A DNA stretch of 64,000 nucleotides from Adineta vaga (lineage: Eukaryota; Animalia; Rotifera). This document shows positions 47,994-52,870 of this stretch, piece by piece (the first letter of the stretch is position 1; every line of letters begins with the position of its first letter). The stretch spans positions 7,254,001 through 7,318,000 of the forward strand of contig CP075497.1 in the NCBI GenBank assembly GCA_021613535.1. Direction: 5' to 3'. The translations under genes were made by a program, and so were the position numbers. The notes below the pieces were generated by a model. The model did no database searches, was not told where the DNA came from, and saw only the letters and a program-made list of their open reading frames with translations.

Positions 47994-50917
47994 TTATTGA
48001 AACTGTTCGATCATATCTCCAGTTTCTTTGGTCACATATCCAAAATAGACTAATAATTTTAAGAATTTAAATTTAAACCATCGTTCCATTCGATCTTTGC
48101 TAAAATAAAAACAAGAAGAAGAAATGAAAATCAACGATCATCTTTACTAATGAAGTTTTTCTTTGACTTACAAAAGTATCAAATCGAAAAGAAATAATTC
48201 AAATCGAGCATAAATACGATCTTTCATAAATCGATGTGGTCCTTCTTGTTTACGAGCACCAAGAATAGCACTAAAAAGATAAATTGACAAAATACGAAAA
48301 TGATTATCCATCGATCTTTTCTAGAACAAGTTGTTTATTCTTGTAACTGAATGACGTCGTTATACTTTGATATGCACAGACAATCGATAGACATGATTAA
48401 ATATTCTATTAGATGATTGCGTGTGGAAATTTATTTTTAATAAAAACATATAACTTAGTACTACTGATTATGATGTTTTCAATATATATATATATATAAA
48501 TATCTAGTTCAATGGGGTTATACAAATGTTACTAACCTTCGAGCCATAATTGTATGTCGATCGATAAGATTTCCATGATCACGAATAGTTGATCGTATTT
48601 GATTTAAATTTCTAGAAAAGATTTTGTCGACGATATTTATATATATTTATCATAAATAAAATCATTCAGTCTCAAAGAAGATTTATTGTTCAACGTTGAT
48701 CTTGTTATGAAAACTACCTGAGAACAAGAATAAGTTTGTCTGGTAATTGTTGAAATACATCAATAACTTGATCCATTGTTTCACGAGCTTTCAATTGAAT
48801 ACGAGCCATTTCTTCTTTAGTTATTTTCTGTCGAAATGATACACTACCAGCTCGAGAACGTAATGATTGCATTATCAAAATTTCAGCAAACAGACGATGA
48901 TATTTCTCTATATATAATGTCATCAATGAAAACACAATCTTTGTTTACTATCGATCTCTCTCTCCCTCTCTTGCACACACAATTATTCAAAAGAAAACGA
49001 TGACGATAACTAACCTTAAGATCATTAATAATGGTCGAGGCATATTATAAAGAATTCGTAAAACACTATCTTGAATATCATTGAAAATAACTGAAAAATC
49101 TTTACGTATAGCCATTTTTTGTTGTGGACTCAGATTTAAGAATTCTCTTTCAGTCTATGAGTTTTATCAAAGAAAGAAAATTTTGGAGAATGAAGAAAAT
49201 GATCGATTTCTTACAGGAAGACGAATTTTTCCTTGTTCATGTGCAGCTTTTTGATCATCGGATGACATTTGATCCCAAATTTCTGGTAAGATTGCTAGAT
49301 CATGAATAGGTCGATGAATTGGTCGCATAGAAAGAACCGTAGCAAATGTCAAATAGTCCTTATCTATATCAACAAGACAACAGTTCAATATTTCATCGTC
49401 ATCATTTTCTTTCTCATAGAATTGTGAATGTGTATGTTAATTATTAGAACATCTTTAACTTACCTTTCACGCCAAGTGCTATTGAATATTGTTTCATTTT
49501 AGCTTCATCTTTTAATATGATTGCTTTCCATAATTGACATAAAGCTTCTCGATCTTTTGGACTAATAGTAACATATAAACCATGATCAAGTAAAACGATT
49601 TGAACATTAGATTTCGTCGGAGTCTTAGGATCTTTTCGAACATAAACATTGCCTGGCTAATAAGAGAAAAAAAGATTTCGTTTATGGAATAAAGGATATC
49701 TACACCCAACATACATGAGGATCAGCATGTACGAAACCTGAATGAAATATTTGAAAAGCCATTGCTTCCACCAGTTTCGTATCAATTTCTTTCAATGATA
49801 AATTTGATTGTTTAATTTTATCTAAATCGGAAACTTTGATTCCATCGATGTACTCCATTACTAATACTCGTTTCGTTGTATATTCCCAGAAAACTTTTGG
49901 AACATAGATATATTTTAAATAAGGAGATAATTGGGCATAACATAAATCAGCATTTTCACCTTCTAGTTTAAAATCAAGTTCACGTTCTAAACTAGTCTTG
50001 ACTGAATCAATCATCCAACCAAATTCAAATTTGGGAAAGATTTTACCCAATGCATATAATATCATTCGAATAGTTAGAATATCACCGGTAAAACGATCTT
50101 GTAAATCAATATATTGCAATTTAACTGCGACACGTTCATCAGTTGATTTCAAACGACCTTCATACACTTCAGCTAGAGACGCGGCAGCAATTGGTTCAGG
50201 AGAAAGATAAGAAAATAAATCAGACACTTGACAACCAAATTCTTCATCGATTAACTGACTAACCTAAATAATCCATTTCGATATTTTGATTAAATCATGA
50301 GAGAAAAAAGACTATTTTACTTCATTTCGTTGTCTCCGTAGAGCTTTATCTTGCAAAAGACGAAGACCTTCCGTATATTCTTTCGGTAAAATATGATCAG
50401 CACTGACCATTCCTTGACCCATCTTTACATATAAACCACCATTATCTATACATCCTTGTGCTATTCGAGCTGCAGCACGTTGATGACATTCTTTTAACTT
50501 TATTTCATATTCAAGTGATGTTTCTGGTACTGTCCAAAAAAGATATTTATAATCAATTGCAATAAGCGCACCGATTTGAAATGATCTATAATATAGATAA
50601 TCTCAAACTATTTCGATAGTTTTCTCAAAATCATACGAACCGATATCCAGTTGAAAACCTTCAAAAGTGACACGTATTTGACGTTGTTCTTTAGGTGTTA
50701 GATAATAAAAATAATAGAGACTACTACCGCCAATAATTACTCCATTAGCAATCAAAAAATTTCGTAGAAAACGATGATTACCACGTTTTCCACCGATTTG
50801 ATTAGCAACTGATTGAACTGTATTTGAATTATTATTTGAAATAAACTTTTTTGTTATTAAACGATACGAATAGGATGGTAATAACAATGAACAAGCTCGA
50901 AAAGCATTTACATACAT
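47994..50917 (-). CDS. ADCK5: ABC1/UbiB atypical kinase, ADCK5-like, with mutually exclusive cassette
   Basis: GGLYVKMGQG, PIAAASLAEV, VAVKLQY, ELDF..EG.N, GFVHADPHPGN, LLDHGLY, LRNLNQIRS...DR...MARSA. Confidence 0.88.
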
Positions 50918-51091: not shown

Positions 51092-52870
51092 TTAATGTCT
51101 CATACGTTTGGCTCGTCCATTTGAAGTGCTATCCATTGTTGTTGCATCAAAATCTTCATCCATGGCTGACTCATCATTAGATTGTAAACGTTTACAAGTT
51201 TTTATAGGTGAAGATGTTGGATTGATAATTTTCTCTACTCGATTAGTATTGTCATCATCATTTAATAACCATGGATGTTGAAGTACACCGTTTATTGTCA
51301 ATCGTTTAATCGGATCAACACACATCATTTGACGAATGAGATCTTTTGCAACATCGGAAACATCTGACCAAAATTCATCAGGAAATGTATAAAGACCTTT
51401 GAGAATTTGTTCTGTTAATGAAGGTAAATCAGGTGATTCACTAAATGGTGGATAACCAACTAAACATATATATAAAATAACGCCTAAACTCCATACATCA
51501 ACTTTATTTGTATAACTTCCTTCGCCACGATTTGCTAAAATTTCTGGTGCTATGAAAAAGAAAAAGAAGATTAATTTTTAATTTTTAATTTTTAATTTCT
51601 ATTTTCAATTCAATTTCTTACCAAGATAATTTGGTGTACCACAAAATGTTTTCATTAATGTTGTTTCATTAATCAATCTTGATAAACCAAAATCAGTGAT
51701 TTTAATTAATGTTTCATTTGTTTCCGATGATGTTAAAAGAACATTTTCAGGTTTTAAATCACGATGTGTTATCGAATTATCATGAAGATATTTTACGCCA
51801 ATACACATTTGTCGAAAGAGAAATTTACTTGTACTCTCATCAAATTGACCATGAGCAACTATACGATCAAATAATTCTCCACCCTCAGCTAATTCAAGTA
51901 TTATAAAGAGAGCTTCATGTGCTTCATGAACATCATGAATACGAATAATACATGGATGATTTAATCGTTGTAATATTGAACATTCACTTTTGATTTGTTG
52001 ATTAAAAACTAAAGCTTGTGGACCAATATGTGTAAACGTTTTTTTGGCAATGATTTTCATAGCAAAACGATCACATGTACCTATGAAAACAATGAATTAA
52101 ATTATTCACATCTGTTTCAATATGAAGAATAAATATACATTTGAATATTAGCTCAACTTATGCGTCTGTTTGAACATAAAATTATGAATACAATTACAGA
52201 ACTCTGAACTTTGACAGATTCCTAGAGTTTTATGAATACTCAATTTAATCTTTCAGTAAAAAGATGTCATTCTAGCACATAGTTTACCTCGTAAGAAGCA
52301 TAATTTAACTTCTCCGTAAGCTCCTCGTCCAATTTGTTTTGAAACGATGTATTTCTCTCTAACTACAGGTGGAATTGATGAATCTTCTAACGCATTCGCA
52401 TCCATATAAATATAAACACGATGTGTTTTTGATGACAAGGCAATTTCCGAATTGTTTTCTAGAACATGTTTTTTATTTTTGCCAAGTTTTTCACCATTGA
52501 CATACGTTCCATTTGATGATAAATCATGTAAATAAACAAAATTTTTTATTTCATCACGAATGATTTTAAAATGCGTCGAAGAATAAGTTGGATAATATTT
52601 CGTTGTTTGAATTTCATTTGAATTAAATAATACTGAACATGTTTTACCACGACCAAATGAATATTCTTGATCAATCAAATTAATTGATGGAAATAGTTTA
52701 TTTAAAGATAATAAACGACCCCATACATTTGCTTGTTGAATATTGTCTCCATCTTCTTCAATTCCATCAAATTTTTGTGTTGGTAAACTCAAAGTCTAAA
52801 TTAAAGTCAAGTATTTCGACTAGAATAGAAAGATTTTTAATCGACAAACCATTGGCAATGGTTCACTCAT
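51092..52870 (-). CDS. CHEK2: Checkpoint kinase 2 (FHA plus Ser/Thr kinase)
   Basis: WGRL..FGRG..S.THF..DLSSNGTYVNG FHA; IGRGAYGEVKL, HRDLKPEN, KITDFGLS, LMKTFCGTPNYLAPE. Confidence 0.93.

What the first reader, a model, noticed from the sequence alone, without database searches (positions are those of the whole stretch)
48718..49363. ADCK5 carries an asymmetric mutually exclusive cassette: two-exon module A versus single exon B
Seen in sequence: after the exon ending LGVK-G (donor 49463, phase 1) two alternative routes lead to the exon starting R-NLNQIR (48611, phase 2). Module A = exons 49363-49215 + 49154-49015 (289 nt; DKDYLTFATVLSMRPI...MPRPLLMILR). Module B = exon 48907-48718 (190 nt; EKYHRLFAEILIMQSL...LPDKLILVLR). 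Both begin Y..FA..L and end P..L.L.LR, so they encode the same C-lobe segment. Both are 1 mod 3 in length, and including both or neither shifts the frame. A is 33 aa longer and highly diverged from B, yet both are open with canonical GT-AG sites. Inference: an old duplication keeps two switchable C-terminal subdomains of a mitochondrial UbiB kinase. I know of no such arrangement for ADCK genes.
Basis: partly seen in the sequence, partly recalled or inferred. Interest (0 to 1): 0.85.

Follow-up and report, generated by a model that had tools for sequence, protein, structure and literature searches.

The report
Ancient switchable exon cassette in ADCK5
A rotifer mitochondrial kinase-like gene (ADCK5) really does make two proteins by choosing one of two alternative exon modules for the same part of its fold. 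The same choice exists in molluscs, crustaceans and insects, so it is old and probably functional, though unstudied.

Summary
On the minus strand, module A (exons 49363-49215 and 49154-49015) and module B (exon 48907-48718) are both open, have GT..AG sites, and each alone keeps the frame.

Spliced RNA contigs from three studies show both routes. One contig joins the upstream exon, B and the downstream exon directly. No A2-to-B splice was seen. A is the major form. B is very roughly a fifth to a third, judged from crude contig depth.

In nine related environmental contigs every exon present is open and of the same length. dN/dS is B 0.07-0.15, A1 0.09-0.21, A2 0.11-0.41 and constitutive exons 0.05-0.17.

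The arrangement is not special to rotifers. B is the canonical "short" ADCK5 segment, also found in flies, rodents and an ichthyosporean. A resembles a "long" alternative exon that lies just upstream of the short one, in the same intron phases, in a thrips, Artemia and a bivalve. RefSeq already lists such long/short isoform pairs for many pancrustaceans. I found no paper describing it.

New here: the introns flanking module A are reverse-complementary, with a 21-bp core. This is conserved with compensatory changes in seven Adineta-like sequences. It would loop A out and favour B, as the upstream pairing does in Drosophila srp. This is a new member of a known kind.

The parts
49715..50263 (-). 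Constitutive exon E3: kinase-like core of the ABC1/UbiB domain, ending at the HADPH motif
   Evidence: Pfam ABC1 E 4.9e-58. Exon ends fixed by RNA junction 49715>49656 and the loose end at 50263.
49464..49656 (-). Constitutive exon E4: end of the ABC1 domain (PGN..DHG..LGVK). Its donor is in phase 1.
   Evidence: Pfam ABC1 profile positions 195-243 of 244. Junctions. Donor GTAAGT.
49364..49463 (-). Intron I1 (100 nt) between E4 and A1. It carries the 5' arm of the long-range duplex.
   Evidence: Junction 49464>49363 in 4 runs. It is about twice the length of the constitutive introns here, which are 58-60 nt.
49393..49413 (-). 5' arm ('docking' element) of the 21-bp core duplex. It ends 29 nt before the A1 acceptor.
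   Evidence: the repeat finder pair I2. Present in both the MFE and the centroid fold. All 21 positions pair, 18 Watson-Crick and 3 G-U. RNAalifold columns 63-78.
49215..49363 (-). Exon A1, first exon of module A (long-type cassette, N-terminal half)
   Evidence: Open, 149 nt. Spliced in 4 runs. 78-90% amino-acid identity in relatives, dN/dS 0.09-0.21.
49155..49214 (-). Intron (60 nt, phase 0) splitting module A. The long exon of the thrips, Artemia and the bivalve has no intron here.
   Evidence: Junction 49215>49154 in 4 runs. Single long exons in L009, L010 and L015.
49015..49154 (-). Exon A2, second exon of module A (long-type cassette, C-terminal half). Its donor GTTAGT is in phase 2.
   Evidence: Junction 49015>48611 in 3 runs. 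Long-class profile 21.0 bits against short-class 11.4. 35% identity to the Owenia long segment, E 4e-9. dN/dS 0.11-0.41.
48908..49014 (-). Intron I3 (107 nt) between A2 and B. It carries the 3' arm of the duplex.
   Evidence: An unspliced contig spans it in X12 (record 14).
48989..49009 (-). 3' arm ('selector' element) of the core duplex, starting 5 nt after the A2 donor site
   Evidence: RNAalifold columns 500-515 with compensatory pairs 66/512, 72/506 and 78/500.
48718..48907 (-). Exon B: single-exon short-type (canonical ADCK5) cassette. It has a weak acceptor tract and the donor GTAGTT.
   Evidence: Short-class profile 47.4 bits, iE 1e-13. 31% identity to the bivalve short exon, E 7e-9. 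Junctions 48718>48611 (3 runs) and 49464>48907 (1 run). 82-94% identity and dN/dS 0.07-0.15 in relatives. Splice sites.
48612..48717 (-). Intron I4 (106 nt) between B and the downstream exon
   Evidence: Junction. No significant pairing with I1 or I3.
48537..48611 (-). Constitutive downstream exon D (RNLNQIR...). Its first base completes the invariant Arg codon that both cassettes leave split.
   Evidence: Junctions 48611 and 48537>48270. 100% amino-acid identity in all relatives.

Best explanation
The gene is the ADCK5-type UbiB/ABC1 kinase-like gene of a bdelloid rotifer, probably Adineta vaga. After the exon that ends the Pfam ABC1 domain, the pre-mRNA is spliced either to module A (two exons, 96 residues, major form) or to module B (one exon, 63 residues, minor form), and then to the shared exon that begins RNLNQIR. 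Both modules encode the same piece of the C-lobe of the kinase-like fold: a short helix, a variable loop, a long helix and the start of the next conserved helix. So two proteins arise that differ in about one sixth of the fold. B is the ancestral, canonical ADCK5 segment. A is most likely the rotifer copy of a 'long' alternative exon that already lay upstream of the 'short' one in an early protostome, and that later gained an internal intron in rotifers. Exclusivity is at least backed up by the reading frame, because including both or neither gives early stops (inferred to lead to nonsense-mediated decay). The choice is probably set by RNA structure. The intron before A1 and the intron after A2 pair over about 38 positions with a 21-bp core. 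This loops out module A, covers the region just after the A2 donor and the likely branch-site region of A1, and brings the upstream donor next to the weak acceptor of B. When the duplex forms, B is used. When it does not, A is used. Shown here: the exons, frames and junctions, conservation and selection, homologous cassettes in other phyla, and the conserved complementarity. Inferred: the effect of the duplex on exon choice, decay of the wrong forms, and any functional difference between the two proteins.
For: Sequence and frames.
RNA junctions for both routes, including one contig joining E4, B and D.
Single-copy gene in the genome.
ADCK5 identity: Pfam ABC1 and best named relatives annotated as ADCK5.
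Conservation: 9 metagenome loci and 18 protein clusters hold exon B at 74-95% identity. The order E3-E4-A1-A2-B-D, exon lengths and AG/GT sites are kept. dN/dS is well below 1 at dS 0.4-1.1.
Classes: the profile split between long and short is clean in 235 relatives. B scores 47 bits on the short profile. A2 prefers the long profile and groups with long exons, support 82/99. Pairwise E values are 4e-9 and 7e-9 to other phyla, while A against B gives nothing.
Same order and phases in the thrips, Artemia and the bivalve.
RefSeq isoform pairs differ only by the cassette.
Fold position.
RNA duplex: RNAalifold finds it unaided and reports compensatory pairs; in both MFE and centroid; z -2.6 in the window, -5.8 to -11.4 in five relatives; 88% of cells paired against 29-56% when slid. 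The duplex is absent in a more distant rotifer contig that lacks B.
Experimental precedent: PMC4691838 (Drosophila srp), where an upstream intron / inter-exon intron pairing directs use of the distal exon.
Against: The RNA evidence is from assembled contigs, not reads. The E4>B junction was seen in only one of four runs. Ratios are crude, and rare A+B forms would be missed.
Unspliced contigs cross the introns beside B, so part of the coverage of B is pre-mRNA or DNA.
Assignment of A to the long class is not decisive. A1 scores higher on the short profile, and a tree forcing A2 and B together is not rejected (AU p 0.096, post hoc).
The duplex is untested by mutation, and the window's own duplex energy is only modestly better than shuffles (3 of 150 reach it).
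No second pairing was found that would explain why B is skipped when A is used.
No comparable duplex was significant in the thrips.
No functional difference between the isoforms is known, and ADCK5 itself is poorly understood (PMC12193262).
Confidence: 0.8

Rival explanations
1. The rotifer A/B pair arose by a rotifer-specific exon duplication and only resembles the arthropod and mollusc long/short pair by convergence. The deep conservation would then apply to B alone.
For: The AU test does not reject A2 and B as one clade (p 0.096). A1 scores better on the short-class profile (13.9 against 6.7 bits). A is split by an intron that other phyla lack.
Against: A2 aligns to the annelid long segment at E 4e-9, but A and B do not align to each other at all. 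A2 groups with long exons at 82/99 support. The order (long upstream, short downstream) and entry/exit phases are the same in four phyla-level lineages. The second ADCK5-like gene of the genome also carries an A-like segment.
Confidence: 0.2
2. The complementary introns flanking module A are not a splice switch. They may be the remains of an inverted-repeat insertion or complementary microsatellites. Alternatively they may serve something else, such as back-splicing of A1-A2 into a circular RNA or formation of double-stranded RNA.
For: The outer parts of the stem in relatives are CA and TG repeats. Flanking inverted repeats are the classic promoter of back-splicing (established knowledge). The window's duplex energy is only z -2.6 against dinucleotide shuffles.
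Against: The core arms are conserved while the neighbouring intron sequence has diverged, and several pairs change on both sides. The arms sit right at the A2 donor and the A1 branch-site region. The stem is missing in the one rotifer contig that lacks B. No back-splice junction appeared among the joints of four runs, although contigs are poor at showing one.
Confidence: 0.25
3. Only one module gives a working protein. The other route is splicing noise or a regulated unproductive form.
For: B is the minor form by contig depth, and its full junction pair was seen in one run only. B has weak splice sites.
Against: Both routes are in frame to the natural stop. B is as conserved as constitutive exons (dN/dS 0.07-0.15) and is the canonical ADCK5 segment. 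A is the major form and also constrained. Both forms are annotated from transcript evidence in many arthropods.
Confidence: 0.05

Closest known systems
ADCK5 long/short isoforms annotated in RefSeq for pancrustaceans (for example Thrips palmi X1/X2, Artemia franciscana X1/X2, Homarus americanus X1/X2/X3, Penaeus, Amphibalanus, Macrosteles)
   Same: Same gene family, same position directly after the ABC1 domain, and same entry phase 1 and exit phase 2. The long exon is upstream and the short one downstream. The proteins are identical outside the cassette.
   Different: In the rotifer the long module is split into two exons and is 96 rather than 80-85 residues. Decapods and a barnacle have three alternatives. 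These isoforms exist only as automatic annotation, and I found no published description.
Drosophila serpent (srp) exon 4.1/4.2 mutually exclusive splicing by bidirectional RNA pairing (PMC4691838)
   Same: Two alternative exons. A conserved element in the intron after the upstream constitutive exon pairs with an element in the intron between the alternatives. This loops out the proximal exon, and in srp it is experimentally shown to direct use of the distal exon.
   Different: srp has a second, downstream pairing that favours the proximal exon, and none was detected here. The loop here encloses two exons and an intron. The effect here is predicted, not tested.
Docking-site/selector systems of Dscam1 exon clusters and similar competing RNA structures (PMC3535345, PMC6071210)
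   Same: Intronic long-range base pairing, conserved with covariation, is used to pick one exon from a tandem array of homologous exons.
   Different: Here there are only two choices and one duplex, with no competition among several selectors.
COQ8A/ADCK3 (PDB 4PED, 7UDP), the solved UbiB-family structure
   Same: The fold is the same. The short-isoform model of a Daphnia ADCK5 aligns over residues 114-509 to COQ8A 258-644 (Z 28.9, rmsd 3.6 A). The cassette therefore lies inside the conserved C-lobe.
   Different: Sequence profiles stop aligning just before the cassette. No alternative cassette is known for COQ8A. ADCK5 has an extra C-terminal long helix.

Membership tests
UbiB/ABC1 atypical kinase family, ADCK5 subfamily | ABC1 (PF03109) domain above the curated cut-off | tested here: met
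   Exon E3 scores 196.6 bits and exon E4 42.1 bits against a cut-off of 22.9. Together they cover profile positions 15-243 of 244.
UbiB/ABC1 atypical kinase family, ADCK5 subfamily | Signature motifs: KxGQ in the N-terminal extension, the catalytic-loop HxDxHxGN motif, and DHG/DFG | tested here: met
   KMGQ lies in the open frame 50602-50315, HADPH|PGN lies across the E3/E4 junction, and LLDHG lies in E4 (read directly).
UbiB/ABC1 atypical kinase family, ADCK5 subfamily | Closest named relatives are ADCK5 rather than ADCK1, ADCK2 or COQ8 | tested here: met
   The best full-length relatives of E3 (46-55% identity) are named ADCK5 or ADCK5-like. ADCK1-like sequences form the outgroup in the cassette tree.
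UbiB/ABC1 atypical kinase family, ADCK5 subfamily | Mitochondrial location and ATPase or kinase activity | not testable with these tools
   Not addressed. The joined protein was not submitted to any predictor.
Mutually exclusive exon cluster | Adjacent alternative exons encode the same protein segment and are homologous | tested here: met
   Both match the cassette profiles of ADCK5 relatives at the same position. They share the N-terminal DY..F and C-terminal P..L..LR ends. Direct A-to-B similarity is below BLASTP detection.
Mutually exclusive exon cluster | Each alternative alone keeps the frame, while both or neither breaks it | tested here: met
   289 and 190 nt are both 1 mod 3. Premature stops arise for A+B and for skipping both.
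Mutually exclusive exon cluster | Transcripts carry one and only one alternative | tested here: met
   Contigs E4-A1-A2-D (X1; in X12 from the A2>D junction together with the E3-E4-A1-A2 contig) and E4-B-D (X11) were found, and no A2>B junction in four runs. The limit is that contigs drop rare forms.
RNA-pairing-controlled mutually exclusive splicing (srp / docking-selector type) | Conserved complementary intronic elements placed in the upstream intron and the inter-exon intron | tested here: met
   There is a 21-bp core and about 38 pairs in 7 sequences. 88% of cells are paired, against at most 71% for displaced helices.
RNA-pairing-controlled mutually exclusive splicing (srp / docking-selector type) | Compensatory covariation in the stem | tested here: met
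   Pairs 33/556, 34/555, 37/552, 39/550, 40/549, 66/512, 72/506 and 78/500 change on both sides in at least one sequence. With only seven related sequences this is supportive, not proof.
RNA-pairing-controlled mutually exclusive splicing (srp / docking-selector type) | Disrupting and restoring the pairing changes and restores exon choice | not testable with these tools
   This needs minigenes or genome editing.

The most novel reading that the evidence does not exclude
ADCK5 carries one of the oldest mutually exclusive exon pairs known in animals. A long and a short version of a C-lobe segment would have been kept side by side since before the split of Spiralia and Ecdysozoa, which by established dating is more than about 550 million years ago. 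The two forms would give this orphan UbiB protein two different partner or lipid specificities. In Adineta the switch is thrown by a conserved intron-intron RNA duplex that loops out the long module.
Probability: 0.45. Interest if true: 0.7.

Novelty: new member of a known kind. Interest (0 to 1): 0.55.

Why it matters
ADCK5 is one of the least understood members of the UbiB family. A 2025 review (PMC12193262) says that ADCK family members other than ADCK3 are structurally uncharacterised and poorly understood functionally, with incomplete information on enzymatic activity and substrates. A cassette held under purifying selection in two versions across rotifers, molluscs and arthropods marks that part of the C-lobe as functionally decisive. 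It also offers a natural experiment: isoform-specific knockouts or binding screens could show what the protein recognises.

For splicing biology it adds a deeply conserved and asymmetric mutually exclusive pair (two exons against one). In a non-arthropod it adds a clear candidate for control by long-range RNA pairing.

Practically, several deposited gene models fuse both cassettes or omit the short exon. These could be corrected.

Tried and rejected
- **Direct A-to-B similarity:** BLASTP found none. Homology had to be shown through profiles of relatives.
- **Solved structures with exon B alone:** no hit. The profile search against PDB stops aligning just before the cassette, so residue-level mapping onto COQ8A by sequence failed. 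Only the structural range could be given.
- **A second copy (ohnologue) of the gene with both modules in the same genome:** none exists. There is only a distant paralogue on another chromosome, with an A-like segment and no B.
- **A second RNA pairing flanking B (I3 with I4, or I1 with I4):** not better than shuffles, and RNAalifold did not predict one.
- **An equivalent duplex in the thrips:** not significant (z -1.2).
- **A long exon in a beetle (Diabrotica) and a second exon in a starfish (Acanthaster):** none found, so the pair is not universal.
- **The Owenia locus:** could not be fetched.
- **The desiccation link:** could not be tested, because run identities are coded and only one read-laying run was allowed.
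- **The count of structure pairs:** not used, because it needs a 611-character typed structure string. The same counts were made in a script instead.
- **Joined protein:** All searches used single exons by reference. Frames across junctions were checked only in local scripts. The two folded proteins are Daphnia ADCK5 isoforms returned by a search.
Full report
**What is in the sequence**

On the minus strand the window holds an ABC1/UbiB kinase-like gene. Its exons, fixed by RNA junctions, are E3 49715-50263, E4 49464-49656, D 48537-48611, 48172-48270, and a last exon ending near 48099.

E4 ends the Pfam ABC1 domain, at profile position 243 of 244, and stops one base into a codon.

All three are open in the required frame and have AG/GT sites. 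A1+A2 (289 nt) and B (190 nt) are both 1 mod 3. A alone or B alone reads through to the natural stop. A plus B gives a premature stop 342 nt before the last exon junction, and skipping both gives one 169 nt before it.

**Are both routes used?**

I laid the Logan contigs of four runs from four studies on 48000-50300, which is 2,301 letters and within the operators' limit. The runs are recorded only as guessed RNA or unknown. They must contain RNA, however, because their contigs skip every intron exactly at GT..AG.

| Junction | Runs |
|---|---|
| 49464>49363 | all four |
| 49215>49154 | all four |
| 49015>48611 (A to D) | three |
| 48718>48611 (B to D) | the same three |
| 49464>48907 (E4 to B) | one (X11) |

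The X11 contig is 247 nt long. It holds 29 nt of E4, the whole of B and 28 nt of D, which is the form expected for the bubble of a B-only isoform in an assembly graph. No A2>B junction was listed.

Word depth of the A path against the B path was 21.5 to 6.2 (X1), 43.7 to 19.4 (X11) and 17-33 to 6-12 (X12). B is therefore the minor form, very roughly a fifth to a third. The tool warns that contig depth is a poor measure. Low-depth unspliced contigs also cross the introns on either side of B, so some pre-mRNA or DNA is present.

**Are both modules functional?**

The gene is single-copy in the 100.8-Mb, six-contig genome. Exon B alone found 18 protein clusters and nine metagenome contigs at 74-95% identity.

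The four contigs that span the whole region keep the order E3-E4-A1-A2-B-D, and the five shorter ones hold consecutive parts of it. Every exon present has the same length, an open frame and the expected AG/GT sites. The one exception is a contig that lacks the E3-E4 intron altogether.

Against the window, at synonymous divergence 0.4-1.1, the values are:

| Exon | dN/dS |
|---|---|
| B | 0.07-0.15 |
| A1 | 0.09-0.21 |
| A2 | 0.11-0.41 |
| E3 (constitutive) | 0.05-0.16 |
| E4 (constitutive) | 0.07-0.17 |
| D | no amino-acid change |

Both modules are therefore coding sequence under purifying selection. B is as constrained as the core.

**What the modules are**

An exhaustive search with E3 and a profile search returned ADCK5 proteins whose segment after the LGV motif falls into two clean classes:

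- **Short class** (61-63 residues): found in Drosophila CG7616, rodents, a cephalopod, a tapeworm, a tick and the ichthyosporean Chromosphaera. It is therefore ancestral.
- **Long class** (80-85 residues in arthropods, 71-72 in an annelid and a bivalve).

Exon B is a short-class exon. It scores 47.4 bits (iE 1e-13) and has 31% identity to the bivalve short exon (E 7e-9).

A2 prefers the long-class profile, at 21.0 against 11.4 bits with shuffles reaching at most 7.4. It aligns to the Owenia long segment at 35% identity (E 4e-9). In a tree of cassette segments it groups with the long exons at 82/99 support.

This assignment is not airtight. A1, which carries only the shared N-terminal helix, scores higher on the short profile. 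A tree forcing A2 and B together is 13 log-likelihood units worse but is not rejected (AU p 0.096, a test named after seeing the tree).

**The arrangement is old and already sits in databases**

In the thrips Megalurothrips (L009), the brine shrimp Artemia (L010) and the bivalve Sinanodonta (L015) one gene holds a long exon, then a short exon, then the shared exon. In the thrips and the bivalve the short exon is not in the deposited model.

In the thrips and Artemia I read the splice sites. The cassette is entered one base into a codon after LGV-x and left two bases into the invariant Arg codon, exactly as in the window.

RefSeq isoforms X1/X2/X3 of ADCK5 in Thrips palmi, Frankliniella, Macrosteles, Artemia, Homarus, Penaeus and Amphibalanus have identical prefixes of 404-420 residues and identical suffixes of 88-96 residues. 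They differ only by a long or a short cassette. Homarus and Amphibalanus have three alternatives.

A beetle has only the short exon, and a starfish has a single exon of intermediate type. A more distant rotifer contig (67% identity, 41% GC) has A1 and A2 but no B.

The simplest reading is one duplication before the split of Spiralia and Ecdysozoa, followed by losses. In rotifers an intron was later gained inside the long exon.

Four full-text searches found no paper describing this. A 2025 review of the ADCK family does not mention it (PMC12193262).

**Where the cassette sits in the protein**

Instead I folded the long and short isoforms of Daphnia carinata ADCK5 with class-specific alignments (pLDDT 85 and 82).

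Both cassettes begin with the same short helix and end in the helix that runs into the invariant R-N-x-N-x-x-R motif. Between these ends they differ:

- The short form has an 18-residue low-confidence loop and one long helix.
- The long form adds two short helices before the long one.

The short-isoform model aligns over residues 114-509 to COQ8A 258-644 (Z 28.9, rmsd 3.6 A). The cassette (406-469) is therefore an integral part of the C-lobe of the UbiB fold, not a tail. What the difference does to the protein is unknown. A change of partner or lipid recognition on that face is my inference.

**How the choice may be made**

The three introns around the modules are 100-107 nt, about twice the 58-60 nt of the neighbouring constitutive introns. 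Aligning them among relatives exposed one conserved block in the intron before A1 and one at the very start of the intron after A2, and the two blocks are reverse complements.

In the window the core is 21 consecutive pairs, 18 Watson-Crick and 3 G-U, between 49393-49413 and 48989-49009. The 3' arm begins 5 nt after the A2 donor. The 5' arm ends 29 nt before the A1 acceptor.

- **Single-sequence fold:** the duplex appears in both the minimum-energy and the centroid fold of the 556-nt stretch.
- **Consensus fold:** RNAalifold on seven sequences, given no hint, predicts a 38-pair stem enclosing the whole of module A. Eight of its pairs change on both sides in at least one sequence.
- **Energy against shuffles:** duplex energies beat dinucleotide shuffles by z -5.8 to -11.4 in five relatives and by z -2.6 in the window.
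- **Pairing across the alignment:** 88% of alignment cells pair, against 29-56% when one arm is slid and at most 71% for displaced helices.
- **Other intron pairs:** neither shows this.
- **Contig without B:** the rotifer contig that lacks B has no such duplex.

This geometry matches the upstream pairing of Drosophila srp, where mutation and compensatory rescue showed that looping out the proximal exon directs use of the distal one (PMC4691838).

I therefore predict that the duplex hides the outer splice signals of module A and brings the E4 donor to the weak acceptor of B. That acceptor has 9 pyrimidines in 18, against 12 for A1. Without the duplex, A is used and B is passed over. Double inclusion is removed by the frame. 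I found no second pairing that would enforce skipping of B, so that half of the mechanism is open.

**Verdict**

It is not a peculiarity of bdelloids or of desiccation. It is the rotifer instance of an ancient, widely retained but undescribed long/short cassette of ADCK5. In rotifers the long module is uniquely split in two and flanked by a conserved RNA duplex.

I rate it a new member of a known kind, of moderate to good interest. It gives a handle on an orphan UbiB protein and a clean candidate for RNA-structure-controlled exon choice outside arthropods.

I did not test that beyond the genome's size, contig number and base composition.

Noticed in passing
G000:C4:3969572-3971700 (loci L002 and L007; ORF L007:1051-1665): A second, distant ADCK5-like gene in the same genome. 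It encodes the HADPHPGN core, the DHG region and an A-like long cassette (about 98 residues) in one uninterrupted exon. The cassette-end intron is kept at the same phase and is followed by an RNLNSVR exon. There is no short exon. It could be an old copy derived from the A isoform.
   Followed up: partly
L020:660-661 (metagenome contig Ga0116230_10087759): This relative has no intron between E3 and E4 (the exons abut), while the window and the other relatives have a 43-66 nt intron there. This is an intron presence/absence difference among close lineages.
   Followed up: no
L011:1750-2288 and 2636-2694 (Logan contig of SRR27500694): A more distant rotifer copy (67% identity in E3, 41% GC) has A1 and A2 followed directly by exon D. 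It has no B exon, and it has a 540-nt intron before A1. Either B was lost in that lineage or this is an A-only duplicate.
   Followed up: partly
L009:12692-12871 (Megalurothrips usitatus) and L015:38359-38532 (Sinanodonta woodiana): Clear short-class ADCK5 exons (82 and 93 bits) that the deposited gene models omit. Conversely, the models P0160 (Artemia), P0164 (Chionoecetes), P0188 (Frankliniella fusca) and P0255 (Timema) string both cassettes into one protein, which is probably an annotation error.
   Followed up: partly
P0161 versus P0168 (Daphnia carinata ADCK5 isoforms X1 and X2): These two isoforms already diverge from residue 219, with similar but non-identical sequence. Daphnia may have a second alternative region in the N-lobe in addition to the C-lobe cassette.
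   Followed up: no
window 48718-49044 and 48584-48747 (RNA contigs X12 records 14 and 13; X1 records 3 and 4): Low-depth contigs run unspliced through the A2-B and B-D introns. They could be pre-mRNA, contaminating DNA or a retained-intron form, and contigs cannot tell which.
   Followed up: no
window 48985-49001 paired with 48754-48766 (alignment A5, columns 27-39 with 263-275): RNAalifold proposes that the 3' arm of the duplex could alternatively pair with a stretch inside exon B. This is 10 pairs, four of them changed on both sides in one sequence. It may be a competing structure or may be chance.
   Followed up: no
window 48722-48741 and 49219-49238: A 20-nt, 80% complementary inverted repeat lies between the 3' end of exon B and the 3' end of exon A1 (repeat finder pair I3).
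   Followed up: no
L016, L017, L024 introns flanking module A (alignment A4, columns 25-50 and 527-556): In several relatives the outer part of the stem consists of a CA repeat in the upstream intron facing a TG repeat in the downstream intron. The two microsatellites lengthen the duplex together.
   Followed up: no
window 51092-52792, minus strand: The upstream neighbour looks like a checkpoint-kinase-type gene. One open frame has an FHA-like N-terminal part and further frames carry protein-kinase motifs (HRDLKPEN). This was read from the ORF list only.
   Followed up: no
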